From positions 124,001 to 188,000 of IMG/VR virus record IMGVR_UViG_3300042540_001399: a DNA stretch of 64,000 bases; one strand, given 5' to 3'. A program made the position numbers and the translations under genes. Positions 942 to 62,153 of the stretch are shown here, in pieces. A model generated the notes under the pieces. It ran no database searches and was not told the origin of the DNA. It saw only the letters and a list, made by a program, of their open reading frames with translations. Every line of letters begins with the position of its first letter. The first letter of the stretch is position 1.

Positions 942-1031
942 AATATATTTTTTTTATTGGTTTGATACAAATATAATAATTTTATCAACAATTTACAAAA
1001 TTTAATCTTCAACAATCGATATTTATGTTAT

Positions 1032-2414
1032 ATGAAAAAAGGAATATTAGTAGAATCAGGAATTAGGGACATTAAAAAGCTTGCTGATAGATACAAAAAG
1101 GCTAAAATTTATTTTCATCAAGATTTGGATGGTGTAACTACTGCAATTGCTATGAAAGAATATTTGGAAGATAATGGTATTGACGTTGTTGACGCCGAAA
1201 TAATACAATATGGTGATAAAGAATTTGCAATAAAAAAACTTGACGCTGAAGGTGATACGATGCCGGTTTTGGTTGATTTTGCCCACGGAAAACCAATGTT
1301 TGTAATTCACACAGATCACCATGATACACAAGCTGGTGTAGAAAAAGGAACATCTACATCATTCAAAAGTTCAAGGTCTAACGTTGAAACAATATCTCAA
1401 AGTTTATCACCTAAAGAAATTTTTACACAAGAAGACATAACGTTAATATCAACTGTTGATTCTGCAAATTTTGCTCAATACAATATATCAGTTGACGATG
1501 TAATGAAGTATATTTTCAAATTAGATAAGAATTCTGATGTTAAAAGAAATAAAATGTTGTTAGGATTAGTTGCTAATAAATTACTTTTAGCGTTCAAAAA
1601 TAAACCCGGATTTCTTGAAGAATTAGTATTAGACTGTAAACCATCGTTACTGAATATTTTATTAAAGATCAAATCAATTATGAAACGAGAAGGTTTTGAT
1701 GATGAAGAAAAACTCACACAAAATCAACAGGCCTACATCCAAAATATGAATGTTAGCCCCAACGTTAATGTTAGCGGTAACATATTAGTTCAATACGGAG
1801 GTGGATACATGACACCACAAGGTTCATATGATAGATATACACCATTTAAAAACAATCCAGACGCTGATTTTTTAGTAATTGCATGGCCGTTGGGATTAGT
1901 TCAAGCATCATGTAACCCATACAAAAAAGAACGAGCACTTAAGGGTGTTGATTTGGGTGAAATCAAAAATGAAGTATTGGATGAAATGAATCCAGAATTA
2001 CAAAGTATTATTGTACCATTATCAGTTTTGAAAAGAATATCTGAAACAAAAGCAACCTTCAAGTCTGTTGGTTTTACATTTAAGGATTTTATGGCAATTT
2101 ATGGTAACAGTCCATCTTTGAAAGTTTTGGGTAGAAAAGAAAGTTTATTCCCAATATTGGATAACATAATGAATAGACCTTACAGAAAACTAAGTGAAAA
2201 ACAAATTGCTTTATTAGATAAAGTTGTACTAAATGGTAGAGATATCATAAATGCAAATTCTGGGGGACATAAATGTATTACCAATATTTCAGGTATTAGT
2301 TTTCTTTACAGAAAAAAAGATGGTGGAGAACAAAAAAGTTATGTAGATTTAACAAAGCAGATACAAAGTAAGTTTTACGAAATTTTACAGGCAAAAATCA
2401 GTTCTGAAAAATAA
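1032..2414 (+). CDS. DHH-family phosphoesterase with short leader (MKKGILVE)
   Basis: FHQDLDG, LVDF, TDHH and C-terminal SGGHK motifs; TATTTAT at 1020-1026. Confidence 0.7.
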   Translation: MKKGILVESGIRDIKKLADRYKKAKIYFHQDLDGVTTAIAMKEYLEDNGIDVVDAEIIQYGDKEFAIKKLDAEGDTMPVLVDFAHGKPMFVIHTDHHDTQAGVEKGTSTSFKSSRSNVETISQSLSPKEIFTQEDITLISTVDSANFAQYNISVDDVMKYIFKLDKNSDVKRNKMLLGLVANKLLLAFKNKPGFLEELVLDCKPSLLNILLKIKSIMKREGFDDEEKLTQNQQAYIQNMNVSPNVNVSGNILVQYGGGYMTPQGSYDRYTPFKNNPDADFLVIAWPLGLVQASCNPYKKERALKGVDLGEIKNEVLDEMNPELQSIIVPLSVLKRISETKATFKSVGFTFKDFMAIYGNSPSLKVLGRKESLFPILDNIMNRPYRKLSEKQIALLDKVVLNGRDIINANSGGHKCITNISGISFLYRKKDGGEQKSYVDLTKQIQSKFYEILQAKISSEK

Positions 2415-2745
2415 TTTCGTCACCTTCATTTATGTTATATTTTTTACATTCACCACCTGGTAATTCTAAAACAATATCGCCATTTCCATTATATGTCTGA
2501 CACTTACCTTGATTACATGGTTTACAATTGTGATGAATTTTAGTTATAACATCTTCATTTATAAAAATAATATCAAGTGGTATAATACAATTTTTCATCC
2601 AAAAGGAGTGATCCCTACCGTCTAACATGAATAACATACCATCAAAGTCTTCATCAAATTTTTTATTCATCATACCATTTGAAATATCTTTATTTGTCAA
2701 TGCCGACTTGACCCTATAACTATTATTATTTATTACTATGTTCAT
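2398..2745 (-). CDS. DUF192 family protein
   Basis: GMLF, FWMKNCIIPLDIIFI and VLELPGG motifs. Confidence 0.8.
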   Translation of the reverse strand: MNIVINNNSYRVKSALTNKDISNGMMNKKFDEDFDGMLFMLDGRDHSFWMKNCIIPLDIIFINEDVITKIHHNCKPCNQGKCQTYNGNGDIVLELPGGECKKYNINEGDEIIFQN

Positions 2746-2757
2746 ATTTATAAATAT
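2744..2757. promoter_or_regulatory. Palindromic bidirectional TATTTAT-type promoter element
   Basis: ATATTTATAAATAT places TATTTAT on both strands between divergent DUF192 and NUDIX genes. Confidence 0.55.
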
Positions 2758-2763
2758 TGTATT

Positions 2764-3186
2764 ATGAAAGAATTCAAAAGGTATTCGGGTATTGTTATAA
2801 AAAAAGGTAATGAAGTTTTACTATGTAAAAGAAGCCCAAAAAATTCCTTACCTAATGAATGGTCCATTCCATCAGGAGGTATGGAAGGAAAAGAAACGCC
2901 AAAAGAAACCGCAATCAGGGAATTCAAGGAAGAAACAAATATTCAAATAAAAGGGGAATTAAAGTTAGTCGACATACTTAACCTGTATGAGGATGAAGAT
3001 ACAAAAAAAGGTTTAATGTATATTTTTCTTCATGAAACAAATAGATATGTGTTTCCTGAACTTGAATCAGCAAAAGATGGTCATGAACACACAGAATGTG
3101 GGTACTTCAACTTAAAAAACAATCCTATAAGTAAAAAAAATCAAGAATTTGGTAAAATAATTACAAATATTTTGAAAAAATATTGA
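2764..3186 (+). CDS. NUDIX hydrolase
   Basis: Nudix box GGMEGKETPKETAIREFKEET. Confidence 0.9.
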   Translation: MKEFKRYSGIVIKKGNEVLLCKRSPKNSLPNEWSIPSGGMEGKETPKETAIREFKEETNIQIKGELKLVDILNLYEDEDTKKGLMYIFLHETNRYVFPELESAKDGHEHTECGYFNLKNNPISKKNQEFGKIITNILKKY

Positions 3187-3216
3187 TTTTTACCAATTTA
3201 TCACATATTTATTTAA

Positions 3217-3308
3217 CACAAAAAAACATTACACCCCTTTCACTTACTGTAATGGTTTATCAAAACCCAACCCACAAATTAAGTAAAATTTCTTTGTGGG
3301 TTTTTTTA
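3217..3308 (+). ncRNA. Candidate short late non-coding transcript
   Basis: TATTTAT at 3206-3212, CATTACA/TGTAATG hairpin, then AACCCACAAA/TTTGTGGGTT terminator; no credible ORF. Confidence 0.35.
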
Positions 3309-3324
3309 TATACAAAATTTCCCT

Positions 3325-3332
3325 TATATTTG
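3325..3332 (+). promoter_or_regulatory. Bacteroidota primary-sigma -7 element (TAnnTTTG), representative copy
   Basis: TATATTTG. Other copies before genes at 3876, 4272, 8127, 9479, 10455, 21576, 26875, 29469, 47203 (+) and 968, 36651, 41635, 56015 (-). Confidence 0.75.
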
Positions 3333-3346
3333 TATAAATAAAAAAA

Positions 3347-3538: not shown

Positions 3539-3539
3539 A

Positions 3540-3869: not shown

Positions 3870-3887
3870 TTCATGTATATTTGTATT

Positions 3888-4163: not shown

Positions 4164-4283
4164 TTTCTTTGTTTCCTATAAAACAAAGTGGTGGAGTCAG
4201 TCCAATTTGGACGGCCTGAAAAAAAGGGATCTTTTACGATCTCTTTTTTTGTTTTATATTAAAATTTTTATTATCTTTGTTTT

Positions 4284-4496: not shown

Positions 4497-4500
4497 TACT

Positions 4501-6454: not shown

Positions 6455-6481
6455 ACTTTTTTTTTAGATATTTATCTGAAT

Positions 6482-8102: not shown

Positions 8103-8139
8103 TTTTTCTAATCCAATTTAATTTCCTATCTTTGTTTCT

Positions 8140-10443: not shown

Positions 10444-10466
10444 AAAAATATTATTATTTTTGTAAA

Positions 10467-16703: not shown

Positions 16704-16732
16704 TATAAAATGTTAATTCAATATTTATATTT

Positions 16733-17362
16733 ATGAAATTTTTATTGAAAGAATCACAAATTGACAGTTTATCAAAAGAAATATTAAAATCTGTAAATAA
16801 CATAGGTTATTTTGATACTTTATTAAGATACAAATTTCCATTTAAAGCCGCAAGTATATTTTTAAAACCAAAAAATAAAGAATATTTCACCCCGAAGGAA
16901 TTAACTGAAATAATGTATTATTATGTTTTTTATGCAAAACAAATACCTAGCAGAATAGAATATAAAAATTTTATTATTGAAAACAGGGAAACCGATTCTG
17001 AAGGTTTTTATTGGGACACGGACATAATAAAAAATCCAAAAAAAAAGTCATTAACTGAAACTTGTTTTGGATATGCCCAACCATTTTGGGAAGACAAAAA
17101 AATTAGTTATTTTGGTAATTTAACCCAAATGCTTTTAGTCGCTCGATTTGATTTCTATACTAAAGGTGATTGGGCTGATCCTGATGAAGAATACATCGAA
17201 GAAGATAAATTTTCCAAAAGTTACCAATTTGATATGTCAGGTCTAAAGTTTAGAACCTTGGATGAAGCAAAAAATTGGTATTTGAATGATTACCCAAAAT
17301 TAGTAGTTGAATTTGCAAATGATTTTTTTGAAAGTGCAAGAACTTTTGAGGAAAATAACTGA
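16733..17362 (+). CDS. Leader-bearing hypothetical protein, paralog of 63560
   Basis: MKFLLKESQI; FDTLLRY and AQPFWE match YETLRRY and ATPYWD in 63560; TATTTAT at 16722. Confidence 0.6.
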   Translation: MKFLLKESQIDSLSKEILKSVNNIGYFDTLLRYKFPFKAASIFLKPKNKEYFTPKELTEIMYYYVFYAKQIPSRIEYKNFIIENRETDSEGFYWDTDIIKNPKKKSLTETCFGYAQPFWEDKKISYFGNLTQMLLVARFDFYTKGDWADPDEEYIEEDKFSKSYQFDMSGLKFRTLDEAKNWYLNDYPKLVVEFANDFFESARTFEENN

Positions 17363-27780: not shown

Positions 27781-27807
27781 ATTAAATGAGCCTAATATTT
27801 ATCATAT

Positions 27808-28506: not shown

Positions 28507-28555
28507 ATAATCTTTGAATTTACAAATAAACAATATATTTATTAGAAAAAAATAT

Positions 28556-29793: not shown

Positions 29794-30351
29794 CTAATCG
29801 TCCCATTGAGAAGTTACATCTAAATAATTTAAACCAAAATCAAGTTGTATTGTGTGAACGTAACCTTCAATCTCACCACGTAACCAATTTACAACATCCA
29901 AATAAATATCATCATAGTGATCATCCATAAGTTCTTCATAGGTTAATTGTCCATCACTTGTATCAAAAGTACCATTTATAATATAAAAACCAAAATTAAG
30001 TTCACCATCTTCCATGTAGAATTTTTCAAAACTACGGGTAATCATAACCTCGAAGTGGTCATTTGAATAAATATTTTGATCTGAGTTTCTTAGGTCTTTA
30101 TCTGTTACCTTTAAATTTGTAATGTATTGGTCAAAAAGTTCGAAAGCCTTATCCTTACCACCAACAAATTCATAATACCATTTATCAATTTGATCTATAT
30201 ATTTAGATAATTTTTTTCTATATAGATCAACGTAACCTATCCTTGGTATTTCACCTGAATTTACTTGGCGTTCCCATAGATTGAAAAAATACTTTTTTAA
30301 TGTATCCATTTTAGAATCTTCTCTTAATATGGTTTTGATAAGATCTTTCAT
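29794..30351 (-). CDS. Leader-bearing hypothetical protein, paralog of 37266
   Basis: MKDLIKTILRE; LKKYFFNLW matches LKRFFYNKW; minus-strand TATTTAT upstream. Confidence 0.65.
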   Translation of the reverse strand: MKDLIKTILREDSKMDTLKKYFFNLWERQVNSGEIPRIGYVDLYRKKLSKYIDQIDKWYYEFVGGKDKAFELFDQYITNLKVTDKDLRNSDQNIYSNDHFEVMITRSFEKFYMEDGELNFGFYIINGTFDTSDGQLTYEELMDDHYDDIYLDVVNWLRGEIEGYVHTIQLDFGLNYLDVTSQWDD

Positions 30352-30412
30352 ATTTAAATAAATACTACAAAAAACTGAAGTAAAAAACTATATTTATTAA
30401 AAATATAAAGTT

Positions 30413-30766: not shown

Positions 30767-30778
30767 ATATTTATTATT

Positions 30779-34648: not shown

Positions 34649-34811
34649 CATCAACTATAAATCAAACCAACAGTATAATAAACTACCACACAATATAAAA
34701 TATACATGTTAATGTAAAACCATTTTTTTTCTGAACTACTCATAATTTGTTTTTTGAACAAAAATATGGGTTCTAATTAACAATACAAAATATTTATTAA
34801 AAAAATAAAAG

Positions 34812-36646: not shown

Positions 36647-36691
36647 ACTACAAAGATAACGAAAATACTCTGTAATACAAAAAAATCCACC

Positions 36692-36820: not shown

Positions 36821-36891
36821 TTTGATTGTTTAAAAGGATTTATGAGTAAAAACACAGTGATAAATATATTCCTTATGGTATTTATATTATT

Positions 36892-39426: not shown

Positions 39427-39451
39427 TTAAAAAATAATAATATTTATATAT

Positions 39452-40666: not shown

Positions 40667-40717
40667 CTTTTTCAGTGAAGAATATATTTATTATTATAAA
40701 ATAAAAAAAAACAAATT

Positions 40718-41620: not shown

Positions 41621-41704
41621 AAGGGTTTTTTTTACAAAGATATTATTTTTATTTGGTTAATCAAACTTTTTTTAAATAACTTTCTGATTTATATTTATAA
41701 TAAA

Positions 41705-46207: not shown

Positions 46208-46224
46208 CGTAGTATTTATAGTTA

Positions 46225-47166: not shown

Positions 47167-47416
47167 TTTTTGAAACATTCTTGTTTTTTAATTTTTTATT
47201 CTTATCTTTGTCAAACTTATGGAAACACAATTTGAAGATTTAGAAAAAAAAATACGTGAAAAATTTGCTGAAAGACAAAAAAATGTCCCTAGAGTTGTTG
47301 ACCGTTATTTAAGAATCAAATTCAAACAAAAACTTAAACAGTTTACAGGAATAAAACTGAAATAACAAAACCCCACCATCTTGTGGGGTTTTTTATTTAC
47401 TCTAATATTTATCATT

Positions 47417-48305: not shown

Positions 48306-48716
48306 ATGAACCTACAAGAAAACATACAAAGAATCAAAGAAATGATGAAAATAAATCATTCATTTTTGAACGAATCGCAAAGTTTAGGAGTTACCAAAAT
48401 TTTGGGTAGACCATTCCAATTAGTTAAAACTGAAGTACCTTACAAATTTGAAATCCAAGATAACAAAAATGACATGATTAAAATGCAAATAACCGCACCT
48501 AATGGTTCTTTTATTAATATAGATGAAGTTGACCATGTTTTGGAAGAAACTGACGGTGGTGGAAAAAAATTGATTGGTTATAATTTCAAGGGTAAGAGCG
48601 GAACTGTAAAGTTGATAGATGTTCCAAATGTTAAAAGAATTATTGAGTTTGTTGATAATTCAGAAAAAAAATCAATAACAATTTCTTTTGTGACATTCGA
48701 AAAAGTACTTGAATAA
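48306..48716 (+). CDS. MNLQE-leader hypothetical protein
   Basis: Leader repeat followed by an unrelated body. Confidence 0.7.
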   Translation: MNLQENIQRIKEMMKINHSFLNESQSLGVTKILGRPFQLVKTEVPYKFEIQDNKNDMIKMQITAPNGSFINIDEVDHVLEETDGGGKKLIGYNFKGKSGTVKLIDVPNVKRIIEFVDNSEKKSITISFVTFEKVLE

Positions 48717-49198
48717 TGAACCTACAAGAAAACATACAAAGGATAAAAGAAATGATGGGAATAATAGTTGAAAATTACTATGACCCAAAAAAGTTGTATG
48801 TTGACATGGGTGGAGTTTTATTCAAAAAAATGGGTGCCGATGAAGGTGGATCAGGTAATGAAACTGATTATATAGGGAGCGAATTATGGGAAAGTATTAA
48901 AAAATATTACCCAATAATTCTTACTTCCACAGGATCCAAAAATATAGAAAATTCAGAAAAAATAAAAACCAAACAAGTTCAAGACTATTTAAACCCAATT
49001 CCAAAAATTGAATTTGTTGTCTTTGGGGCTGATAAAAAAACTTTTGCCACCACAACTCAAGACGATTTAGTTTATCCAAATATTTTAATAGATGATTCTG
49101 AAACAAACATAAACGGATGGGTAAACAATGGAGGTATTGGAATACTTCATAAAAATAATCAAACAACTTTGGAACAATTAAAAAGTTATATCAAATGA
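48716..49198 (+). CDS. MNLQE-leader HAD/5'(3')-deoxyribonucleotidase-like protein
   Basis: LYVDMGGV, ILTS, KK and ILIDD...GGIGILH. Confidence 0.7.
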   Translation: MNLQENIQRIKEMMGIIVENYYDPKKLYVDMGGVLFKKMGADEGGSGNETDYIGSELWESIKKYYPIILTSTGSKNIENSEKIKTKQVQDYLNPIPKIEFVVFGADKKTFATTTQDDLVYPNILIDDSETNINGWVNNGGIGILHKNNQTTLEQLKSYIK

Positions 49199-49950
49199 AC
49201 CTACAAGAAAACATACCGGTACATATAAAAAGAAGAATTCATTTAATTGATAAGGTAATAGATAATTTGTTACCCAATATGTATCCGTGTGATTATAATT
49301 CTTATGACCATTTTGTGGAAGGAGTATTAGATGAAATTAGATGGTTTTTAATTGATGTAGAAGAATTACAACGTATTGAAAGATCGGATATTGAAAACTA
49401 CATTCTTGATTACAAATATGATGAATTAACTGAATACTTCAATGAAAGGTGTATTGTTTTAAAAAATGATAAACTACAAGAAAACATAAGAAGACTTTCA
49501 AGAGAAAATTCACTAAAGAATGATTTGATGAATCTAATTGATAATGTTGGTTTAAAAAAAGCGTCAAAGGCTGTGGGAGGGATGGTTAGATTATTAAAAA
49601 TATTAGATCTTGATCAACAAGAAATTAATAATTTTATTTACCAGTATCTAAAAGAAGAGTTTTATCCTGATTATAATTGGGGACCTGAAATACATGATTT
49701 TTATAAAAAAGAAATTGAACAGTATGGTATATATGATTTTTTGATTAATGATGATCCGGCATATTCATATTTAGGTGAGTGGGATGGATATGAATATCTA
49801 TACACACTATCAATTGGTAAACTTGTCAGGGATGAACTTACAAAACTGTTTGGGGATAAGTGGATTCCAATTTTTAAGAAATGGTTTGAAGAAAACTCAG
49901 GTCTTGAAGTAAGAGAAATAGACTTAAATAATAAATTTTTAGTGTATTGA
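49195..49950 (+). CDS. MNLQE-leader two-module protein (RR/YPC module and KAVGG module)
   Basis: Internal second leader KLQENIRRLSRE. Confidence 0.7.
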   Translation: MNLQENIPVHIKRRIHLIDKVIDNLLPNMYPCDYNSYDHFVEGVLDEIRWFLIDVEELQRIERSDIENYILDYKYDELTEYFNERCIVLKNDKLQENIRRLSRENSLKNDLMNLIDNVGLKKASKAVGGMVRLLKILDLDQQEINNFIYQYLKEEFYPDYNWGPEIHDFYKKEIEQYGIYDFLINDDPAYSYLGEWDGYEYLYTLSIGKLVRDELTKLFGDKWIPIFKKWFEENSGLEVREIDLNNKFLVY

Positions 49951-50297
49951 TTGAGGTGAACAAAAAAGAATTTATAAAAAGACTATTAAGGGAAAATAAT
50001 TCAAATCCAATTAATCCAATTTTAAGAAGATTGGATGTCGTTGATTGGTTGGTTGAGTTTTCAGTAAGAGAAATAGAAAGACAATATAATGGTATATGTA
50101 AAGTAAGAACCCCTGAAAACTTTTTGGAAATTGTAATAGAAAAGACTGGGGATGGAATGTATTGGGATTATTTTTCTGACACACTAGATGATGATTCAGA
50201 AGAGTGGGCGGAAATGTATAGATTCATATCCATATATGTGTATAATAAATTTGGTGATAAGTTAAGAGAACATTTTCACACACAGTGTGGAGATTAA
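49947..50297 (+). CDS. LRR-motif helical module protein
   Basis: NPILRRLD...C...C; exact start uncertain. Confidence 0.6.
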   Translation: MIEVNKKEFIKRLLRENNSNPINPILRRLDVVDWLVEFSVREIERQYNGICKVRTPENFLEIVIEKTGDGMYWDYFSDTLDDDSEEWAEMYRFISIYVYNKFGDKLREHFHTQCGD

Positions 50298-50311
50298 CAT
50301 AATTATATAAT

Positions 50312-51094
50312 ATGAACCTACAGGAAAACATATTAAGAATTAAACAAATGATGGGACTTGTTACAGAAGTTACTAATCCATACAAAGTTGAATGGTTGGA
50401 ACCTACACAAGAATACTTTACACAAGAGTTAAGTGAGTTATTGGGCAATCCTATTAGGTTTACAGACAAAGAGTTTTTCAACCCTGAAAACTATGATACG
50501 GTTTATAACATTATGCCACACACATTCAAAACGATTGCTGAATTTTCTAAAGGTGAATATGTGGAAGGCGAAGATAAAATTAAGGACATACTTCTAAATC
50601 AAAATATAATATCTCTTTTAAAAGAAGAAGAAAGATGGAATGAATTGAAAAACATTTTAATGAATGACCCGCAATCAATCCAAGAAGGTTATGATTTCTT
50701 CAGTCGTGGTCAAATGACGATATGGAAAGGAACTAACCCTGAAACAGGTGAACATATTGATAATGTAAACAACACTGATTACATGGGTGAATTAACAAGT
50801 TTTCTTGAACCATTAAAAAAAACCGTATCTTCCAAAATGTCATCACATTTGAAAAAAGTTGGTGACGGAGAAGGTAATAAAGATTTACACGCTTTTGCAG
50901 GAAACATCGACCAATATAGAGAATTTGCAAAGAAAAGTGAAACAAGAAAATTACCAGCACCATTTGTTGTTAAATACTACACAAAGAAAAATGATAAAGA
51001 TTATGTTTTAATAGGTGGATTCAAAAGAAGTTCAATCGCATTACAAATGGGTATTGAACCAATAAAAGTTTGGTTAATAGATTTAACAATATGA
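50312..51094 (+). CDS. MNLQE-leader protein with C-terminal ParB/Srx-like motif
   Basis: LPAPFV...LIGGFKRSSIA. Confidence 0.55.
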   Translation: MNLQENILRIKQMMGLVTEVTNPYKVEWLEPTQEYFTQELSELLGNPIRFTDKEFFNPENYDTVYNIMPHTFKTIAEFSKGEYVEGEDKIKDILLNQNIISLLKEEERWNELKNILMNDPQSIQEGYDFFSRGQMTIWKGTNPETGEHIDNVNNTDYMGELTSFLEPLKKTVSSKMSSHLKKVGDGEGNKDLHAFAGNIDQYREFAKKSETRKLPAPFVVKYYTKKNDKDYVLIGGFKRSSIALQMGIEPIKVWLIDLTI

Positions 51095-51840
51095 ACCTAC
51101 AAGAAAACATACAAAGGATTAAACAAATGATGGGGATCATTAACGAGAATATAGATGATGTTCTTGACAAAATGAGCCGAGGTGAAGAATTGTCACAGGA
51201 AGATAAAAATAAAATGTCAGTATTTCAAAAACATCTTTTTTCAGGAAAAAAAGAAAATGATTTCAAATATCACAGAGTATCTGAGTTAAATATTGCAGAA
51301 CCTAATTCAGAAAATCATGTAAATGAATCACAAATTCTTGTACACTACGATTCTAATACTAATATCAAACCAGAATACATGGTAAAAAAAATTGCACTTA
51401 TTTTAAATAAATCAAACATTGATTGTGTAGTTGGGTATTCTTTTAGATTGTTTACATTTGCCAATGGGTATTTTGTTAAGGTAAATGAGTACCAAGTCGA
51501 AAACGCAATTTATGTTTTGAATAAAAACGGGTTTAGTACGGAAATGAATCCAATGTATGATCTTTCAAATAACTATGACACAAAAAGTAACCGAGAAGAA
51601 AAACTACAAAACTTTTCTGAAAATTCAGATATAATAATTTTGAGTGACTCTGAAATTTATCAAAATTTAAATCTTACTGATACACAATTTAATGATAGAT
51701 TAGAAAAACTGTTAAAAAAATTTGGTATAAATAACTTCTTTATAACAAAAAATAAAATAACCATTTCTGATAAATCAAAAATTGACGATGTGATTAATTA
51801 TTTGAATACCAAAGGATACAACACAAGAAGATCAAGATAA
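51091..51840 (+). CDS. MNLQE-leader hypothetical protein
   Basis: True start at 51091 (ATGA overlap with previous stop). Confidence 0.7.
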   Translation: MNLQENIQRIKQMMGIINENIDDVLDKMSRGEELSQEDKNKMSVFQKHLFSGKKENDFKYHRVSELNIAEPNSENHVNESQILVHYDSNTNIKPEYMVKKIALILNKSNIDCVVGYSFRLFTFANGYFVKVNEYQVENAIYVLNKNGFSTEMNPMYDLSNNYDTKSNREEKLQNFSENSDIIILSDSEIYQNLNLTDTQFNDRLEKLLKKFGINNFFITKNKITISDKSKIDDVINYLNTKGYNTRRSR

Positions 51841-51841
51841 T

Positions 51842-52249
51842 ATGAATTTACAAGAAAACATATCAAGGATTAAACAAATGATGGGACTTCTTACAGAAGG
51901 ACTTCATGACACATATTGGCAAAATGAAGATGGTGACAAAATAACTCTAATTGATTTATTAAATGCAACACAAGACATACCTGTAGAAGAATTTTCCGTA
52001 GAAGAATTAAAACCGCATCTATTAACTTGGGATGGGGATGAAGATGAGGTTAAAAAAATAGAAAGTGCCAATTTACAATACCCAATATTAATATTCGTAA
52101 ATGACGATGGTGAATTTATATCAATTATAGATGGTCATCACCGAGCACAAAAAGCGGTGAGAAAAGGGTTAGAAACAATTAAGGCGAAGGTAATACCAAT
52201 TAATTCTTTACCTAAAAACATAAGAAGAGTATTTTCACATATGAACTAA
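51842..52249 (+). CDS. MNLQE-leader ParB/Sulfiredoxin-like protein
   Basis: ANLQYPILI...IIDGHHRAQKA. Confidence 0.8.
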   Translation: MNLQENISRIKQMMGLLTEGLHDTYWQNEDGDKITLIDLLNATQDIPVEEFSVEELKPHLLTWDGDEDEVKKIESANLQYPILIFVNDDGEFISIIDGHHRAQKAVRKGLETIKAKVIPINSLPKNIRRVFSHMN

Positions 52250-52250
52250 T

Positions 52251-53531
52251 ATGAACCTACAAGAATCCATAAGAAGAATATTAAGGGAAGATTTGTTAAA
52301 TAAATCAAAATTCTTTCTAAGAAGAATTAATTTAGATGAGGTTAAAAAATTACTTCCAATCAACGCAGAACAAGTACATGGTGAAACAAAAAGTTATGAG
52401 CAATTCAAGTATGAATTAACTTTAAGAGCCGTGGAGGCAATTATGTGGAATGATTATGAACTCGGGTGGGAAGATCTACCAGAACAAGAGGAAATAGAAT
52501 TTGTTAATGAAGTTTCCAACATGTTTAATAAAACAATCAAAAAGTTATATAATTCTTATAGTGGAAGAATATTAAGGGAAGAAGATTATTCTCCGGCGGG
52601 TAAAGAAATAATACCAAATAAAATTGTGATCCACAAGTCCAATCCGATCTTCAGAAATAAGATAATGGAAAATGGTCTTAAAGTAAGGGCAGGAGAATGT
52701 TACAAAATATATGTTGGTTATGGTGTTAAGTGTAAACCTGCAATTTTTGCAACCAACTCAACGAACAAAAGAGCATGGTTTGATTCAACATACGACGATG
52801 ATATATGGGAAATAAATACAGAAATGATTCCTGATGTAAAGTGGTATAAAGATAGACACTTTGAGTCAAGGTCAAAACATATTGTTACGTTTCAAGACAT
52901 ACCAAAAGAAGCAATAACTTTAAAATATGAAGGAAGTGGAAGTGGAGATGTAGAAAAGTGGGATAAAGATTCGCCAAACATAGTTAGAGAATCCCAAATA
53001 GACCCTTATCTTCTAAGAAGATTTCATGAGTTCGACGACACTTTCAAATTGGTATCATCAAATGTTTATCCATGTGATTTCAGACATCCACAACATTATT
53101 GGAATTACACGATAGAAAGAGTACTGGAAGCTATTTATTTTAATTTTTTCTATGAAACTAAATCCGAATTAAATTGGGAGTCCCTTTCTGATGAAATTCT
53201 TTATCTTCTAAATAGAACATATTATGATGAATTAGTTTCAGACTGGGAATCCAAGTGTAATAATAATATTCATGAAGATTTTTCACCTGAGTTTTTAAGA
53301 AGAATAACTATAATTGATACGTTAATTGACGCAACCCTTTCTTCTATGTACCCATGTGAATATAGTTCTGAAAAAGCTTTTCTTCGTGGTTTATACGACG
53401 AATTATATTGGTCATTTATAGGGGAAGACTTAAAAATTATTGACTATTCAGATATTATTGATTTTATAGAAGAAAACAGAAAAGAAGACATATATGATTA
53501 TTGGGACGAATATTGTGTTCGATTATCATAA
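52251..53531 (+). CDS. Four-module protein: LRR module, ADP-ribosyltransferase-like domain, two more LRR modules
   Basis: VIHKS...IMENGL...IFAT...DIPKEAI; modules separated by ILREE, VRE and IHE. Confidence 0.6.
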   Translation: MNLQESIRRILREDLLNKSKFFLRRINLDEVKKLLPINAEQVHGETKSYEQFKYELTLRAVEAIMWNDYELGWEDLPEQEEIEFVNEVSNMFNKTIKKLYNSYSGRILREEDYSPAGKEIIPNKIVIHKSNPIFRNKIMENGLKVRAGECYKIYVGYGVKCKPAIFATNSTNKRAWFDSTYDDDIWEINTEMIPDVKWYKDRHFESRSKHIVTFQDIPKEAITLKYEGSGSGDVEKWDKDSPNIVRESQIDPYLLRRFHEFDDTFKLVSSNVYPCDFRHPQHYWNYTIERVLEAIYFNFFYETKSELNWESLSDEILYLLNRTYYDELVSDWESKCNNNIHEDFSPEFLRRITIIDTLIDATLSSMYPCEYSSEKAFLRGLYDELYWSFIGEDLKIIDYSDIIDFIEENRKEDIYDYWDEYCVRLS

Positions 53532-54594: not shown

Positions 54595-54676
54595 AATAAT
54601 ATAACACATTCACTCATTACAAAGGGGACCTCAATCGGTTCCCTTTTTCATTCACTCATATGTTATACTATTTTAT
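54591..54676 (-). other. Second tandem G.A hairpin
   Basis: 19-bp outer stem (two G.T); ATGAGTGAAT paired with ATGAGTGAAT; inner AAAGGG/CCCTTT and ACC/GGT. Confidence 0.7.
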
Positions 54677-55796
54677 AAAACTATAATCCCCCCATTTAGT
54701 TAAGTCCTAATATATTGTCCCCCCATTTAAGTTGACCAATGATTACACATTTTGCGTAACACATTTTGTATAATGTTATGGTACAACTATCAAGACAACT
54801 TTGTACCAAAGTTATATTTTAGTGTTGTACTTGTATTATATTTTGGTGTGGTGATTAGTTACTAAATGAATGTGTATATGAAAAGGGTATAAACATACCC
54901 ACTTATTACCACTTATTAGAAGTTATTACCACTTTACTATGTGTTATTAGTTGTGTAGATTTTAGTGGTCAGGATGTTGAAAAACCCACTAAAGTGGTCG
55001 TTGAAGTTATCTATTTAATGATCTATAAGTGATCTACTAACGACATAAATGTCTGTCCACGGCAACAGTACCATTAATATATGTTTTTCGCTGGAGAATA
55101 GACATAGTGAAAAAAGTGGTTCTGTAGGGGTCAAGAAGGGGGATTTTTTAGGTCTGTAGATAGCAACAGGTACAATTTCGGTGGTAGAAAGTGGGAAGTA
55201 TAGAGTGGGGAAAAGTGGTAGAAAACCCGTAAAGAGATTGTGTCGTGTGTAACGCTCGACTGACATTTTGACAAAAACAAGTTTTTTAACATAATTATTT
55301 ATTAACAATTCCCCCTGGTGATGGAGATATTAAAAGTTTTCAACAAAGTAATTGACAAAAGTGGTGATACCATAACCCTGACATATTGTCACCAAAACTA
55401 TTCTGGTACATGTGTGTATAAAGAACATAACTTGGTTGGTAAAAATAAACCTATCAGACAAAGGTTCTACACCCTTGAGTCATCAGACATGGGGGATGTA
55501 TTAGAATATCTATTTACACAGGGACATATTAAAGATGGGGACTTCAATACCATTGGTCCCCAACTACAAGACTATTCATTAGGTCTTATATATGATCATC
55601 CATTTGATCAATAATATAACGACGAATAAAGTTAGTTATATTTGACGTGGGGAAGTAGTCCAAAAAGAAAGCACACACTGTAAGACCAAACAGAAATAAC
55701 AACGTGATTACAACATAGACCATAAGAAACATTTCCATAACAGAATAATAACACACACCATTCACCTTTTCAAGATCATTAGTATATTTATTATTA

Positions 55797-55920
55797 GAAG
55801 TTCATTTTCCCCACAGTAGGGAATTAGTTGTTCAAGACCCAGGCGGTCTGTAAAGTTCAAGATGAAGTTGACAACATAATTTTCTTAAGGATCCCTATTC
55901 GGTGATGGGGAATTTTTTAT
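55797..55920 (+). ncRNA. Candidate structured late sRNA
   Basis: TATTTAT at 55785; stems TTCCC/GGGAA, AATTAGTTG-TCAA/TTGA-CAAC-TAATT and AGACC/GGTCT; terminal hairpin with T tract. Confidence 0.4.
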
Positions 55921-56010
55921 GCTCCCTTATTTTTTTTATAAGGCATCCTGCCTCTGATTGAGCTCCACGGGTTGTTCCCCCGAGCCCGACTTAACCTTAT
56001 CATCAGTGTC
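55921..56010 (-). ncRNA. Candidate structured sRNA behind a host-sigma promoter
   Basis: TACCTTTG on the minus strand at 56015-56022; stems CTGAT/ATCAG, GGGCTC/GAGCTC, GGG/CCC and GGCA/TGCC. Confidence 0.45.
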
Positions 56011-56347
56011 AATACAAAGGTACGGGATTAATTTGACACTACCAAATTTTCCCCCATGTTTATTTGATCAAAAGTTATTAACACCACTATAGTCGTTTAC
56101 TAAGTTATCAACATGACAGTGTGTCACATGGGGGACCAATAGAGTTTGGCATACCCCTACCATAGGGGGATCCACAAGAATTACCCCCTCCCCCCTCCCG
56201 TATGCCCCCTTATATGACATATTGTCAGGGGAAAAAGGGGGGTCAATCCCAAATATAACATATTCGTAAAAAAAATTCTGGAAAAATTTTTGGGAAAATT
56301 TGGAAACTATACTATCCCATATTATACAGTAAAGTATATTTATCAAT

Positions 56348-56715: not shown

Positions 56716-56812
56716 CTTTTTAATTTACCTTCAAATACTAAAAAAAATTTCTGGAAAAATTTTTCAAAAATATAGGTTTTAGACATTCTACATATTTATT
56801 GGAAAATACATT

Positions 56813-57807: not shown

Positions 57808-57886
57808 AAAATAATTTATAATCTGTGAATTATTTATCCCCCACTTTTATCGGTGGGGTTTTTTGTTTTACATTATATTTATTGAT

Positions 57887-58544: not shown

Positions 58545-58564
58545 TAAAATTCTTCCTTTTTATT

Positions 58565-59347: not shown

Positions 59348-59400
59348 TGGAACCCTCACAGAAATGTGGGGGTTTTTTAGTTGTAAGATATTTATTTCAT

Positions 59401-60021: not shown

Positions 60022-60268
60022 AATTTTTTTGACAAATATTTTTTTTATCATTAATTTTAAATTTGAAGATGAAAAATTTAGGATTGTTTATTGCAGGAAT
60101 TGTTACCGCAATTTTGGCTTTGTTATATTTACCACCATTTATAATTTATCTTATTGGTTGTTTTCAGATTGGGTCATGGATTGGATCTTATATTCAAAAC
60201 AAAAGATTTGAAGATTAATTAATAATTGGTAACTTATACTGTTTTTATTTCACAAATATTTATTTTAT

Positions 60269-60568
60269 ATGGTGAATATACCCACATTTTTACTCAGAAG
60301 ATTTGACGGTCACAAGATAGAAAAGACGATGAAAAAAATTGCCGGTCAAGTTTATTTTGGTACTGACAACAAACAAGAATTCAAAGATGAACTTGTTTAT
60401 AGAACTCTTTCTAATTATTTTTGGACAAAATATAATTTCGATATTACACAACTCAGTGACGATGAATTGATATCTATGAATGAATTAATTTTTAAAATCT
60501 TTGAACCACTTATGAATGTATATTATTCAGGTCTTAAAAAAAATTACCCGAGTCCAAAAACAAATTAA
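60269..60568 (+). CDS. LRR-motif module protein
   Basis: IPTFLLRRFD; TATTTAT at 60257. Confidence 0.65.
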   Translation: MVNIPTFLLRRFDGHKIEKTMKKIAGQVYFGTDNKQEFKDELVYRTLSNYFWTKYNFDITQLSDDELISMNELIFKIFEPLMNVYYSGLKKNYPSPKTN

Positions 60569-60623
60569 TTTTATTTTATTAAAAAATTTTTGAAATTCAT
60601 AAATATTTATAATAAAAATATTT

Positions 60624-61130
60624 ATGGAAACAAATAGATTTAAACAACTTTTAGAATCAACTCTTGGAAATGTTAAACCATTAATTTCTGAACAAAGAGT
60701 AAACCAATCATCAATTCAAACAGTTGAACAATATGTTGTAAAATGTCTTACAGACATTAACAATTTCATTTTAAAAACAAACAAGGAACAAAAGAAAAAT
60801 GTACCAATAATTAAATATACCGTTAAAAGAATGAATGTTGCCGCTGATCCATCATACGGGACAAGACAAACTGTAGAAGTTCCTCAATATACCTTGATGA
60901 TAAACGGAGTACAGGCACCCGCACAATTAGATTTTGGTGTTTATTTAAATAACCCAAATACTTTTTTTAGAATTTGGAAAGATACTTTAGGTAATACAGA
61001 TTGGTTATTGAAAAACATCAAAGATACGCAAATTCTTCCTATAATACAAAATATAGATAAAAAATACTACGATTTATCTTTTAGAGCAACGCAGCAAGGT
61101 AACAAACAATCCCCTGTAAAAAAACCATAA
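60624..61130 (+). CDS. MExNRFKQLLES-leader hypothetical protein
   Basis: Leader shared with 56813. Confidence 0.7.
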   Translation: METNRFKQLLESTLGNVKPLISEQRVNQSSIQTVEQYVVKCLTDINNFILKTNKEQKKNVPIIKYTVKRMNVAADPSYGTRQTVEVPQYTLMINGVQAPAQLDFGVYLNNPNTFFRIWKDTLGNTDWLLKNIKDTQILPIIQNIDKKYYDLSFRATQQGNKQSPVKKP

Positions 61131-61218
61131 GACACATAAAGTTACTTACAGAAAAACCTCATCTTCAAAAGATGAGGTTTTTTATTTTCTTTATGTATTT
61201 ATAACGTATATATTAATT

Positions 61219-61401
61219 ATGACAAACGAACAAAAAGCACAAAAGTATAACGAACTAATGTACGAATATACTAGAACACAGAACAAAATTTCATCAATCA
61301 AAGGTGAATCATTGGAATTAAATCAAAAACAAATCCATGAAGTAAGATTATTGGAAGACAAGTTAAGGTTTTTGATGCAAATGGCAGCGAAACTTCATTA
61401 A
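61219..61401 (+). CDS. Small coiled-coil protein
   Basis: Resembles ORF 21150-21332 (ISSIKGESLELNQ vs ISDIKSKNYELSQ). Confidence 0.55.
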   Translation: MTNEQKAQKYNELMYEYTRTQNKISSIKGESLELNQKQIHEVRLLEDKLRFLMQMAAKLH

Positions 61402-61454
61402 TTTTTATTTTTTTTATTGTATTTATAATAAAAATAAATTACCAAATAAAAAAA

Positions 61455-62093
61455 ATGAAAAACTTTATAATAACTGAATCAGAAAAACAAAGAATTTTAG
61501 AAATGCACCAAAGTGCAACGTCAAGACAATATTTAAAAGAAAATGAAGATGAATGGATAGACATGTCAAATGATATGGAAACAGAATCAGATTTTTCAAT
61601 GATAGATTTAAAAAATGACAGAAATTTCAAAAGATTGGTTTCATTTCTTAAAAGAAATCCTGATGCCGCTATGGATATCAAAAATTCTTTAGAAATGAAT
61701 ATCAATGAGGCTCAAAAATACTATGATTATAGTGATGATCGTGGAAAAAAAGAAATTACTAGAAATCAGTATCTTAAAAGAAAACTAATTAATTATGGTA
61801 TATTTGGATTATTAGGGGCTGCAATTGGTGCAACAATGGGAGCCATGGCTGGTGACCAAGTTTTAGAAGCCGCTCTTCTTATGGCTGGAATGGGTGGTAC
61901 CGTGGGAGCGGAACTTGCTGGTCAGATTGGTAGAGAAAGAGTCAAAGACGAACCACCAACAGACGAAACTTCGATAGAAGATGACGAAACATTAAGTGAA
62001 CGTTGGTCACAAAAATACAAAAGATCAATAGATTGTAATAACCCAAAGGGTTTTTCACAAAAAGCCCATTGTCAAGGTAGAAAAAAAAGATAA
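61455..62093 (+). CDS. Leader-bearing protein with Gly/Ala-rich membrane hairpin and C-terminal WSxKYK...HC peptide
   Basis: MKNFIITESEKQRILEMH; GLLGAAIGATMGAMAG; LSE-RWSQKYKRSIDCNNPKGFSQKAHC. Confidence 0.65.
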   Translation: MKNFIITESEKQRILEMHQSATSRQYLKENEDEWIDMSNDMETESDFSMIDLKNDRNFKRLVSFLKRNPDAAMDIKNSLEMNINEAQKYYDYSDDRGKKEITRNQYLKRKLINYGIFGLLGAAIGATMGAMAGDQVLEAALLMAGMGGTVGAELAGQIGRERVKDEPPTDETSIEDDETLSERWSQKYKRSIDCNNPKGFSQKAHCQGRKKR

Positions 62094-62153
62094 ACCAAAC
62101 CCCGCGTTAATGTGGGGTTTTATTTTTATGTAATATTTATAAAATAAAAAATT

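What the first reader, a model, noticed from the sequence alone, without database searches (positions are those of the whole stretch)
1020..62140. TATTTAT motif 4-6 nt upstream of ATG: candidate late promoter producing leaderless mRNAs
Seen: TATTTAT ends 4-6 nt before the start codon at 1020, 6469, 16722, 27796, 30768, 36879, 39441, 41692, 46213, 47406, 56337, 57876, 59389 and 60257, with longer gaps before several other genes. It also works on the minus strand (29794 gene). Established: T4 late promoters are a single -10 box, TATAAATA, read by gp55. Inference: a gp55-like sigma with altered specificity and near-leaderless transcripts. The heptamer is common in AT-rich DNA, so the evidence is positional only.
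Basis: partly seen in the sequence, partly recalled or inferred. Interest (0 to 1): 0.6.

Follow-up and report, generated by a model that had tools for sequence, protein, structure and literature searches.

The report
Phage late promoter giving leaderless mRNAs
A strict seven-base box, TATTTAT, sits at a fixed distance in front of about a quarter of the genes of this 291-kb water-borne phage of Bacteroidota-type hosts and its many relatives, and is most likely the promoter read by a phage-made, T4-gp55-like sigma factor, often starting the mRNA right at the start codon.

Summary
All 14 plus-strand sites and the minus-strand site are there, and I found one more. In the window 15 called genes carry TATTTAT 4-6 nt before the ATG, against 0.4 in shuffles. 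Genome-wide the figure is 32 against 1.2, and a second class at 12-16 nt gives 39 against 2.1. TATTTAT is the most enriched heptamer upstream of genes (91 of 360 against 6). All seven bases are near-invariant, there is no -35 element, and it marks operon starts, often just after a terminator. Box and spacing persist in 80 related viral loci, in homologues of a window gene at 26-50% identity, and in Flavobacterium phage immuto, where it mostly precedes virion genes. The genome is a T4-superfamily jumbo phage with Bacteroidota-type expression signals and no detectable RNA polymerase. Outside the window it encodes an unannotated 249-aa sigma-70-family protein whose region-2 domain superposes on T4 gp55 (Z 10.8). 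Immuto has this protein and the box but no other sigma. The geometry matches host TAnnTTTG boxes, implying leaderless or 8-12-nt-leader mRNAs. No start site or timing was measured. Verdict: a new variant of the T4 late-promoter principle.

The parts
1020..1026 (+). TATTTAT box, 5 nt before ATG 1032 (460-aa gene)
2750..2756 (-). TATTTAT box, 4 nt before the ATG of gene 2398-2745(-). It forms half of the palindrome TATTTATAAATA.
2745..2751 (+). TATTTAT box, 12 nt before ATG 2764. It is the other half of the bidirectional palindrome.
6469..6475 (+). TATTTAT box, 6 nt before ATG 6482
16722..16728 (+). TATTTAT box, 4 nt before ATG 16733. A second overlapping copy at 16728-16734 runs into the ATG.
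27796..27802 (+). TATTTAT box, 5 nt before ATG 27808
28536..28542 (+). TATTTAT box, 13 nt before ATG 28556 (A-rich leader)
30358..30364 (-). TATTTAT box, 6 nt before the ATG of gene 29794-30351(-)
30391..30397 (+). TATTTAT box, 15 nt before ATG 30413; divergent partner of the previous box
30768..30774 (+). TATTTAT box, 4 nt before ATG 30779
34791..34797 (+). TATTTAT box, 14 nt before ATG 34812
36879..36885 (+). TATTTAT box, 6 nt before ATG 36892
39441..39447 (+). TATTTAT box, 4 nt before ATG 39452 (404-aa gene). Box and spacing are kept in at least 37 of 57 distinct relatives of this gene at 26-50% protein identity.
40685..40691 (+). TATTTAT box, 26 nt before ATG 40718 (long A-rich leader)
41692..41698 (+). 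TATTTAT box, 6 nt before ATG 41705
46213..46219 (+). TATTTAT box, 5 nt before ATG 46225
47367..47392 (+). Terminator-like G+C hairpin with T run, ending 13 nt before the next box
47406..47412 (+). TATTTAT box, 4 nt before ATG 47417
55296..55302 (+). TATTTAT box, 18 nt before ATG 55321
56337..56343 (+). TATTTAT box, 4 nt before ATG 56348
56793..56799 (+). TATTTAT box, 13 nt before ATG 56813
57839..57858 (+). Terminator-like hairpin with T run, ending 17 nt before the next box
57876..57882 (+). TATTTAT box, 4 nt before ATG 57887
59349..59376 (+). Terminator-like hairpin with T run, ending 12 nt before the next box
59389..59395 (+). TATTTAT box, 5 nt before ATG 59401 (endolysin-like gene by PHROGs)
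60257..60263 (+). TATTTAT box, 5 nt before ATG 60269
60604..60610 (+). TATTTAT box, 13 nt before ATG 60624
61151..61183 (+). Terminator-like hairpin, ending 12 nt before the next box
61196..61202 (+). TATTTAT box, 16 nt before ATG 61219
62097..62120 (+). Terminator-like hairpin, ending 13 nt before the next box
62134..62140 (+). TATTTAT box, 13 nt before ATG 62154
4272..4279 (+). Context, second promoter class: host-type TAnnTTTG box ending 4 nt before ATG 4284. Others at 8127-8134, 10455-10462, 21576-21583, 22852-22859 and 36651-36658(-).
   Evidence: geometry from PMC6847099 and PMC9723704

Best explanation
TATTTAT, usually preceded by A and followed by A or T, is a single-element, -10-type promoter of a large clade of aquatic T4-superfamily myoviruses with Bacteroidota-type expression signals. 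No phage RNA polymerase was detected. The host core polymerase is therefore probably redirected to this box by a phage-encoded, highly diverged sigma-70-family protein of 249 aa (genome 270535-271284, minus strand, outside the window). That protein has a gp55-like region-2 domain and a further C-terminal helical domain. Transcription probably starts 5-7 nt downstream of the box, at an A. Where the ATG lies 4-6 nt from the box, the mRNA begins at or within a base or two of the start codon and is leaderless. Where it lies 12-16 nt away, the mRNA has an 8-12-nt A-rich leader. The box drives virion, lysis and many unknown genes, that is, a late or phage-specific regulon. Host-type TAnnTTTG boxes drive another set of genes, many of them with the same leaderless geometry. 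Shown: the positional enrichment, strictness, conservation, operon-start position and late-gene association of the box, and the sigma-family nature of the 249-aa protein. Inferred: that this sigma reads this box, the exact start site, and the timing.
For: Position and strictness. TATTTAT is the top heptamer in the 40 nt upstream of genes, 91 of 360 against 6.1 expected. Spacing is bimodal at 4-6 and 12-16 nt: 32 and 39 genes against 1.2 and 2.1 in shuffles. The exact heptamer occurs 71 times at those offsets against 6 at control offsets, and no one-mismatch variant is enriched. The logo shows only A-TATTTAT and nothing at -35.

Operon starts. Genes with the box have a median upstream gap of 55 nt, against 3 nt for genes without it. 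A terminator-like hairpin ends 6-25 nt upstream of most of the 16 of 81 boxes that have one within 70 nt, against 10 of 277 other genes.

Conservation. In 80 related loci it is again the top heptamer, 286 of 1821 against 21.7, with the same two spacings. The spacer after the sigma-like gene varies in length and sequence but keeps TATTTAT-N4-6-ATG in nearly all distinct loci. Homologues of window gene 39452 at 26-50% identity keep it in at least 37 of 57 loci.

Late genes. In this genome the box precedes tail sheath, tail tube, baseplate, terminase, prohead protease, major capsid and endolysin-like genes. In Flavobacterium phage immuto it precedes terminase, portal, sheath, tube, hub, tape measure and tail spike genes: 29 genes against 2.6 expected, 20 of them in the structural half.

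RNA. Metatranscriptome contigs from four aquatic runs cover genome 258643-262399 only. That span begins within about 30 nt after the box at 258613-258619 and ends after the capsid gene. Depth is zero on both sides, and it steps up about 15-fold in the 200-nt bin that holds the capsid gene's own box.

Sigma. There are no Pfam hits to RNA polymerase beta, beta' or the T7-type enzyme in six frames. The 249-aa protein gives Sigma70_r2 E 0.017 in the six-frame search, and 49 of 84 family members hit Sigma70_r2, best 5e-7. The family profile hits SigA region 2 (E 0.003) and T4 gp55 chain 7d7c_F (E 0.12). hhalign against gp55 gives E 2e-4 over 104 columns. The AlphaFold model has pLDDT 90. All 50 listed structural matches are sigma-factor chains; gp55 gives Z 10.8, rmsd 4.2 A, 118 residues. 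Immuto has this protein (E 1e-35) and the box but no other Sigma70_r2 match.

Start-site geometry. Positions +5 to +7 after the box are A in about 90% of long-spacer sites, which is exactly where the A of the ATG falls in short-spacer sites. The base before the ATG is T in 13 of 13 sites with 4-nt spacing. Host TAnnTTTG boxes with G at -5 (PMC6847099, PMC9723704) show the same 4-5-nt spacing to the ATG here.
Against: No transcription start site, promoter assay or infection time course exists. The RNA evidence consists of assembled contigs at one long-spacer site outside the window, which cannot give an exact 5' end. No short-spacer gene was seen in RNA; the one in the laid stretch, at genome 262699, had zero depth. 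The sigma-box link is co-occurrence only. Sequence similarity to gp55 is weak (hhalign probability 47%), and helical folds give middling Z scores easily (note). Unlike gp55, the protein has a second folded domain that may correspond to sigma region 4, yet no -35 element is seen. No T4-type sliding clamp and no gp33 homologue were found. The box also precedes some non-structural genes, such as a DnaB-like helicase at 24 nt, so 'late' may be too narrow. In the distant relative Mel-JY01, which has a homologue of the sigma, the box is not visibly enriched in the 50 kb examined.
Confidence: 0.65

Rival explanations
1. The box is a promoter, but it is read by the host primary sigma (possibly modified during infection) or by the phage's own 266-aa SigA-like sigma (genome 99846-100646), not by the gp55-like protein.
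For: The phage encodes a complete SigA/RpoS-like sigma with regions 1.2, 2 and 4. TATTTAT shares T, A, T and T with four of the six fixed positions of the host box TAnnTTTG and lies at the same distance from the ATG. No experiment links the gp55-like protein to the box.
Against: Flavobacterium phage immuto has the box before its late genes but no Sigma70_r2 match other than the gp55-like family. The box lacks the near-invariant G of the host element and fixes two positions the host leaves free (PMC6847099). None of the six promoter motifs found by start-site mapping in F. psychrophilum is TATTTAT (PMC9723704). E. coli-type -35/-10 pairs are not enriched.
Confidence: 0.17
2. The box is read by an unrecognised phage-encoded RNA polymerase, for instance one of the very large unannotated proteins of 1612-2188 aa, as in crAss-like or phiKZ-like phages.
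For: Several giant proteins have no family match, and diverged phage polymerases escape Pfam. The box is strict and short, like the promoters of some phage polymerases.
Against: Six-frame searches for the conserved beta, beta' and T7-type domains found nothing even at E <= 1. A sigma-family protein conserved at 54-90% identity across the 80 related loci implies use of a bacterial core enzyme. Immuto (160 kb) has the box, and its annotation lists no large polymerase subunit.
Confidence: 0.06
3. The heptamer acts at the RNA level: a translation-initiation or mRNA-stability signal for ribosomes that lack Shine-Dalgarno pairing, or a processing site, rather than a promoter.
For: Hosts of this type do not use Shine-Dalgarno pairing and tune initiation by sequence just upstream of the ATG (PMC6847099). 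The box lies very close to start codons.
Against: The box is absent from the 144 genes without either promoter motif whose upstream gap is 10 nt or less. It occurs at two discrete spacings rather than one. It often follows a terminator within 6-25 nt. It is T-rich, whereas the known positive determinants are A (PMC6847099). RNA contigs begin downstream of the box at the one site that could be examined. It tracks a sigma-family gene and a functional gene class.
Confidence: 0.05
4. Chance: a common heptamer in 29-31% G+C DNA that happens to lie near start codons.
For: The total count in the window is only about 2 sd above shuffles.
Against: Positional enrichment is 25- to 35-fold with p < 1e-10. 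Composition-matched permutations show nothing comparable. The box is conserved at orthologous sites while the flanks diverge.
Confidence: 0.01

Closest known systems
T4 late promoters (TATAAATA at -13 to -6) read by gp55, with gp33 and the gp45 sliding clamp
   Same: Both are a single strict A/T box about one helical turn upstream of the start, with no -35 element and A/T-rich DNA downstream. Both occur at dozens of sites on both strands before virion genes (PMC2988020). The phage belongs to the T4 superfamily by its portal and gp23-type capsid proteins. It has a small diverged sigma whose region-2 domain superposes on gp55.
   Different: The box sequence is TATTTAT, not TATAAATA; previously described variants in T4 relatives change only the first two positions (PMC2988020). 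The sigma is 249 aa with a second folded C-terminal domain, against 185 aa for gp55. No gp45-type clamp or gp33 was detected. About 40% of the boxes lie so close to the ATG that there is no room for a leader.
Bacteroidota primary-sigma promoters (-33 TTTG / -7 TAnnTTTG) and Shine-Dalgarno-free translation
   Same: The genome uses such boxes too: 41 genes, clustered around genome 120-150 kb. It has no Shine-Dalgarno sequences and has A-rich leaders. The distance from TATTTAT to the ATG equals the distance from the G of TAnnTTTG to the start site, 4-5 nt (PMC6847099, PMC9723704).
   Different: TATTTAT lacks the invariant G and fixes the two free positions. In the hosts only about 5.5% of mRNAs are leaderless, and 87% of leaders exceed 10 nt (PMC9723704, PMC6847099). 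Here 32 TATTTAT genes and about 10 TAnnTTTG genes have start-codon-proximal boxes.
Leaderless mRNAs of phages and bacteria (lambda cI from PRM, many mycobacterial and actinobacterial genes; from my own knowledge)
   Same: A -10 element lies a few bases upstream of an ATG, so transcription starts at the A of the start codon.
   Different: Those cases use the host sigma and are scattered. Here a phage-specific box appears to generate a whole set of such mRNAs in a phylum where they are rare.
Phage-encoded sigma cascades such as Bacillus phage SPO1 gp28 and gp33/34 (from my own knowledge)
   Same: Phage-made sigma-family proteins redirect the host core enzyme to phage-specific promoter classes.
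   Different: SPO1 promoters have both -35 and -10 elements. There is no detectable sequence relationship.

Membership tests
T4-type late transcription system (gp55 / gp33 / gp45 with a TATAAATA box) | Single -10-region box, no -35 element, strict consensus at many sites | tested here: met
   Logo and mismatch scan; about 95 genes carry the box.
T4-type late transcription system (gp55 / gp33 / gp45 with a TATAAATA box) | Box sequence TATAAATA or a close variant | tested here: not met
   The consensus is (A)TATTTAT(W). Positions 4-5 are TT instead of AA, with no tolerance seen. The reverse complement of TATTTATA equals TATAAATA, but the orientation relative to genes is fixed as TATTTAT (ATAAATA gives 3 and 3 sites at the two offsets).
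T4-type late transcription system (gp55 / gp33 / gp45 with a TATAAATA box) | gp55 homologue: a small sigma with a region-2 domain | tested here: inconclusive
   Structure: Z 10.8, 118 of 137 residues of 7d7c_F. Sequence: hhalign E 2e-4 but probability 47%, profile against PDB gp55 E 0.12, pairwise BLASTP E 0.001. No PHROG or Pfam match for the protein itself. The extra C-terminal domain is absent from gp55.
T4-type late transcription system (gp55 / gp33 / gp45 with a TATAAATA box) | gp45-type sliding clamp as activator | tested here: not met
   No match to Pfam DNA_PPF or gp45-slide_C in six frames at E <= 1, and no tblastn hit with T4 gp45. A diverged clamp cannot be excluded.
T4-type late transcription system (gp55 / gp33 / gp45 with a TATAAATA box) | gp33 co-activator | tested here: not met
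   The conserved 122-aa neighbour of the sigma-like gene shows no similarity to T4 gp33. The rest of the genome was not searched with a profile.
Sigma-70 family | Region 2 (core binding and -10 recognition) | tested here: met
   49 of 84 family members match Pfam Sigma70_r2, best E 5e-7. The profile hits SigA region 2 in the PDB at E 0.003. The 50 listed structural matches are all sigma-factor chains.
Sigma-70 family | Region 4 (-35 recognition and flap binding) | tested here: inconclusive
   No Sigma70_r4 match by sequence. The C-terminal helical domain (158-249) is included in alignments to full-length sigmas only at high rmsd. No -35 element is seen in the DNA.
Leaderless mRNA | Primary 5' end at, or within a few bases of, the start codon | not testable with these tools
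   Only contigs of metatranscriptomes were available. The inference rests on geometry (PMC6847099).
Bacteroidota sigma-A promoter (TAnnTTTG) | T-12, A-11, T-8, T-7, T-6, G-5 | tested here: not met
   TATTTAT(W) matches 4 of the 6 fixed positions. The G is absent, and the variants TATTTTT and TATTTGT are not enriched over control offsets.

The most novel reading that the evidence does not exclude
A very abundant, so far unannotated family of phage sigma factors recognises a strict TATTTAT box. The family has more than 1100 clusters at 50% identity, is listed as 'hypothetical protein' even in cultured Flavobacterium phage immuto, and combines a gp55-like region 2 with an extra domain. With this box, a whole clade of aquatic phages of Bacteroidota would transcribe a phage-specific regulon largely as leaderless mRNAs. 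That mode of translation is rare in their hosts and might let the phage separate its own late translation from host translation.
Probability: 0.45. Interest if true: 0.75.

Novelty: new variant of a known kind. Interest (0 to 1): 0.62.

Why it matters
If right, this gives a simple sequence rule for finding transcription units and true start codons in a very common group of large freshwater and marine phages whose genes are almost all unannotated. It names the function of a protein family seen in thousands of metagenomic contigs. It extends the T4 'one box, one small sigma' late-transcription principle to Bacteroidota-type hosts with a different box and apparently without the clamp and gp33 partners. 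It also points to a natural system in which dozens of leaderless mRNAs are made in a phylum that lacks Shine-Dalgarno pairing. That makes the question of how such ribosomes handle leaderless messages directly testable in a cultivable phage-host pair, immuto on Flavobacterium sp. LMO8.

Tried and rejected
- Megablast of 8 kb of the window against GenBank phages found no match.
- No tRNA genes and no Rfam families lie in the window.
- E. coli-type -35/-10 promoters are not enriched: 105 found against 114 expected.
- Pfam searches in six frames for RNA polymerase beta, beta' and T7-type polymerase found nothing. For the T7 family the control genomes also gave nothing, so that blank is weak.
- T4 replication and late-transcription proteins by tblastn gave only marginal hits: gp43 E 0.007, gp44 E 0.02, and none for gp45, with no hit at the sigma-like gene for gp55.
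- The gp55-like protein has no PHROG or Pfam match by itself. phmmer against the PDB gave noise only. tblastn against GenBank phages gave one weak hit, in Mel-JY01.
- Foldseek alone gave no match at E <= 0.001, although its top hits were nearly all sigma factors.
- The 122-aa neighbour shows no similarity to T4 gp33.
- PHROG scans of ten window genes behind short-spacer boxes gave one functional assignment, an endolysin-like protein at 59401.
- A single-protein search for related loci found only two identical copies; the alignment query was needed.
- Scanning for what drives the sigma-like gene itself was uninformative, because TAnnTTTG is too common inside coding DNA.
- The Mel-JY01 segment shows no visible TATTTAT enrichment.
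- Of four fragmentary or complete contigs with TATTTAT before the 39452 homologue, three hold the sigma-like gene. The fourth is only 56% complete. This is suggestive only.
- Complex prediction was not used, because the host polymerase is unknown.

Full report
**Observation.** The heptamer TATTTAT occurs 68 times in the window, 46 on the plus and 22 on the minus strand. That total is only about 2 sd above dinucleotide-preserving shuffles. The minus-strand example is real (box 30358-30364, gene 29794-30351). A further one exists at 2750-2756 for gene 2398-2745. Three of the ATGs (47417, 57887, 59401) lie inside ORFs that the mechanical list starts further upstream. Those upstream starts fall within terminator hairpins, so the ATG behind the box is the credible start.

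The position is what is non-random. In the window, 15 called genes have the box 4-6 nt from the ATG, against 0.42 on average (maximum 4) in 2000 shuffles of the same upstream 60-mers. The whole genome has 32 against 1.2. Composition-matched permutations of the heptamer show nothing similar.

**What the genome is.** The window is bases 124001-188000 of a single 290,887-bp viral contig, 31% G+C, rated 99% complete. It has a T4-type portal and a gp23-type major capsid protein, a contractile tail sheath and a terminase, prohead protease and baseplate wedge. Genes lack Shine-Dalgarno sequences and have A-rich upstream regions. Many are preceded by TAnnTTTG, the -7 box of the Bacteroidota primary sigma (PMC6847099, PMC9723704). 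The nearest cultured relatives by capsid protein are Flavobacterium phage vB_FspM_immuto and 'Microcystis' phage Mel-JY01, at about 43% identity. Metatranscriptome and metagenome runs holding the sequence are aquatic, riverine and freshwater. I take it to be a jumbo T4-superfamily myovirus of a Flavobacterium-like host. The host itself is inferred.

**Anatomy of the element.** Genome-wide, TATTTAT is the most over-represented heptamer in the 40 nt upstream of genes, 91 of 360 genes against 6.1 expected. Aligning 83 sites shows information only in A-TATTTAT, a weak T-rich patch 13-16 nt upstream, nothing at -35, and A-richness downstream. The box is unusually strict. The exact heptamer occurs 71 times at the two preferred offsets against 6 at control offsets, and no single-mismatch variant is enriched.

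The box marks operon starts. Genes with it have a median upstream gap of 55 nt, genes without it 3 nt. Sixteen of 81 boxes have a G+C hairpin with T run within 70 nt upstream, most ending 6-25 nt from the box, against 10 of 277 other genes. In the last 20 kb of the window such terminator-box pairs occur at 47367/47406, 57839/57876, 59349/59389, 61151/61196 and 62097/62134. At 2745-2756 two boxes overlap as the palindrome TATTTATAAATA and face two divergent genes.

**Conservation.** I fetched 80 viral loci around homologues of the candidate sigma, 54-90% identical to it. There TATTTAT is again the top heptamer upstream of ORFs, 286 of 1821 against 21.7, with the same two spacings. The intergenic spacer after the sigma-like gene varies in length and sequence between these loci. 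It nonetheless keeps TATTTAT, 4-6 nt, then the ATG of a conserved MPRP... protein in nearly all distinct loci, with rare TATTTAC or TATTTAA variants.

For a gene of the window itself (39452-40666) I collected homologues at 26-50% protein identity. At least 37 of 57 distinct loci carry TATTTAT upstream, mostly 4-5 nt from the ATG. Five more scored as negative are TATTTAT-GAAT-ATG with a mis-called first ATG. Box and spacing are therefore under selection, independently of the flanks.

**Which genes, and RNA.** First genes behind the box include a terminase large subunit, head maturation protease, baseplate wedge, virion proteins and endolysins. They also include the tail sheath and, in the window, an endolysin-like protein at 59401. 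Mapping onto the annotated immuto genome gives the same picture. Sheath, tube, baseplate, terminase, protease, capsid and two structural-protein homologues carry the box, or follow a gene that does. Recombinase, exonuclease, primase, thymidylate synthase and phosphoesterase homologues do not. A DnaB-like helicase is an exception, with a box 24 nt upstream.

In immuto itself the box is enriched, 29 genes against 2.6. It lies before terminase, portal, sheath, tube, hub, tape measure, tail spike and a gene next to the lysis genes, and 20 of the 29 sites are in the structural half of the genome.

Four aquatic metatranscriptome runs hold contigs that cover genome 258643-262399 only. That is from just after the box at 258613-258619 (ATG 258639) through the capsid gene (260464-262353). 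Depth is zero upstream and downstream, and it steps up about 15-fold in the bin that holds the capsid gene's own box 41 nt before its ATG. The sharp limits argue for RNA rather than contaminating DNA. They are consistent with initiation at the boxes and termination after the capsid gene. Contigs cannot give an exact 5' end, and the short-spacer gene in the laid stretch was not covered.

**Who reads it.** Six-frame searches found no RNA polymerase beta, beta' or T7-type domain. Two sigma-family genes exist, both outside the window.

- The first is a complete 266-aa SigA/RpoS-like sigma with regions 1.2, 2 and 4 at genome 99846-100646. It lies in an operon behind a host-type box.
- The second is a 249-aa protein at 270535-271284(-). 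It has only a marginal Sigma70_r2 signal of its own and no Pfam or PHROG family.

The family of the second protein is very large: more than 7950 hits among 8000 scored candidates, and 1162 clusters at 50% identity. Of 84 aligned members, 49 match Sigma70_r2, best E 5e-7, and no other family recurs. The family profile finds SigA region 2 (E 0.003) and T4 gp55 (E 0.12) among solved structures. hhalign against T4 gp55 gives E 2e-4 over 104 columns at 47% probability. A confident model (pLDDT 90) finds only sigma-factor chains among its 50 listed structural matches. T4 gp55 in the late open complex ranks second: Z 10.8, rmsd 4.2 A, 118 residues, model residues 25-149. Residues 158-249 form a second helical domain that gp55 lacks.

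Immuto has a homologue, gp118, annotated as hypothetical (E 1e-35). It sits at the border between the small early-type genes and the structural module and is followed by a TATTTAT-driven small gene, as here. Immuto has no other Sigma70_r2 match. So the box occurs without the SigA-like sigma but, in everything I examined that has the box, with the gp55-like one. This is co-occurrence, not proof.

**Leaderless geometry.** In F. johnsoniae and F. psychrophilum the primary-sigma box TAnnTTTG occupies -12 to -5, so the start site lies 4-5 nt after the G (PMC6847099, PMC9723704). In this phage about ten such boxes end exactly 4-5 nt before an ATG, six of them in the window. By established geometry that puts +1 on the A of the start codon. 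TATTTAT shows the same distance distribution.

In the long-spacer class the 5th to 7th bases after the box are A in about 90% of sites, both in this genome and in relatives. In the short-spacer class those are the positions of the A of the ATG, and the preceding base is T in 13 of 13 sites with 4-nt spacing, a pyrimidine-purine start context. If the box is a -10-type element, short-spacer genes can have at most a 4-6-nt leader and most likely none. Long-spacer genes have 8-12-nt A-rich leaders. In the hosts, leaderless mRNAs are about 5.5% of the total, and 87% of leaders exceed 10 nt (PMC9723704, PMC6847099). The phage's usage is therefore atypical. Fifteen of the 32 short-spacer genes lie in this window.

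**Rivals.**
- Chance is excluded.
- A translation or RNA-level signal fits poorly. The box is absent from tightly coupled genes, has two discrete spacings, follows terminators, is T-rich where the known positive determinants are A, and lies upstream of the RNA limit at the one site seen.
- Reading by host sigma-A or by the SigA-like phage sigma cannot be excluded for this genome. It is disfavoured by immuto, by the missing G, and by the absence of such a motif among mapped Flavobacterium promoters (PMC9723704).
- An undetected phage polymerase is unlikely, given the conserved sigma.

**Comparison and novelty.** Functionally this is the T4 late-promoter principle: one strict A/T box at -10, no -35 element, a small diverged phage sigma, dozens of sites on both strands before virion genes (PMC2988020). 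It fails membership in the T4 system on the box sequence, and no gp45-type clamp or gp33 was detected. The sigma has an extra domain. Full-text searches found no paper that describes TATTTAT as a phage promoter or discusses promoters of immuto-like phages. The sigma family is annotated as hypothetical in the isolate. I rate it a new variant of a known kind. The systematic leaderless layout in a phylum without Shine-Dalgarno pairing is the most interesting part.

**Limits.** There are no start sites, no timing data, and no biochemical link between sigma and box. The host is inferred. Gene starts are from my own simple ORF calls. 

Noticed in passing
window 4272-4279, 8127-8134, 10455-10462, 21576-21583, 22852-22859, 36651-36658(-); genome-wide 41 genes: A second promoter class, the Bacteroidota primary-sigma box TAnnTTTG, is clustered around genome 120-150 kb. 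Many boxes end 4-5 nt before the ATG, which by the published geometry (G at -5) also gives leaderless mRNAs.
   Followed up: partly
genome 99846-100646 (+), locus L001:1330-2130, outside the window: The phage encodes a complete 266-aa SigA/RpoS-like sigma factor (regions 1.2, 2 and 4, no region 1.1) in an operon behind a host-type box. Flavobacterium phage immuto lacks it.
   Followed up: partly
window 48306-53531: Six consecutive genes begin with the same 15 nt (ATGAACCTACAAGAA, ATGAACCTACAGGAA or ATGAATTTACAAGAA, all giving MNLQE...). This looks like a tandem array of paralogues with a shared N-terminus.
   Followed up: no
window about 54600-56330: A stretch with little coding potential and locally high G+C, including C runs (around 56185). 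It has no Rfam match. It could be an origin, a packaging or terminal region, or an uncharacterised RNA.
   Followed up: partly
window 2745-2756; also genome 286223/286237: The palindrome TATTTATAAATA places two overlapping boxes back to back and serves two divergent genes. TATTTATA is also the reverse complement of the T4 late box TATAAATA.
   Followed up: partly
window 39452-40666: This 404-aa protein of unknown function belongs to a widespread viral family (255 tblastn-confirmed stretches in IMG/VR) with invariant motifs such as YGANTKWCI and LFFFIID. Most members are expressed from a start-codon-proximal TATTTAT box, but one lineage uses a TAnnTTTG box with a leader.
   Followed up: partly
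L111 (Microcystis phage Mel-JY01, PP395634.1, 140002-190001): This phage, recorded as infecting Microcystis, shows TAnnTTTG-like boxes (for example gtaagtttgta and tatatttgt) and no Shine-Dalgarno sequences upstream of its genes. It shares the sigma-like gene and its small neighbour. Its expression signals look Bacteroidota-type, so the recorded host may deserve a check.
   Followed up: no
genome 270146-270514 (-), locus L002:713-1081: A conserved 122-aa protein (MPRP.KKEI...) always follows the sigma-like gene, also in immuto (gp117) and Mel-JY01, and is always behind a TATTTAT box 4-6 nt from its ATG. It has no family match and no similarity to T4 gp33. It is a possible partner of the sigma.
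   Followed up: partly
L020 5397-5461 (genome 260397-260461): Metatranscriptome contigs of related strains replace the 67-nt spacer before the capsid gene with different A-rich spacers of about 15-38 nt that lack TATTTAT. In some relatives the capsid gene is therefore probably co-transcribed with the upstream 585-aa gene.
   Followed up: no
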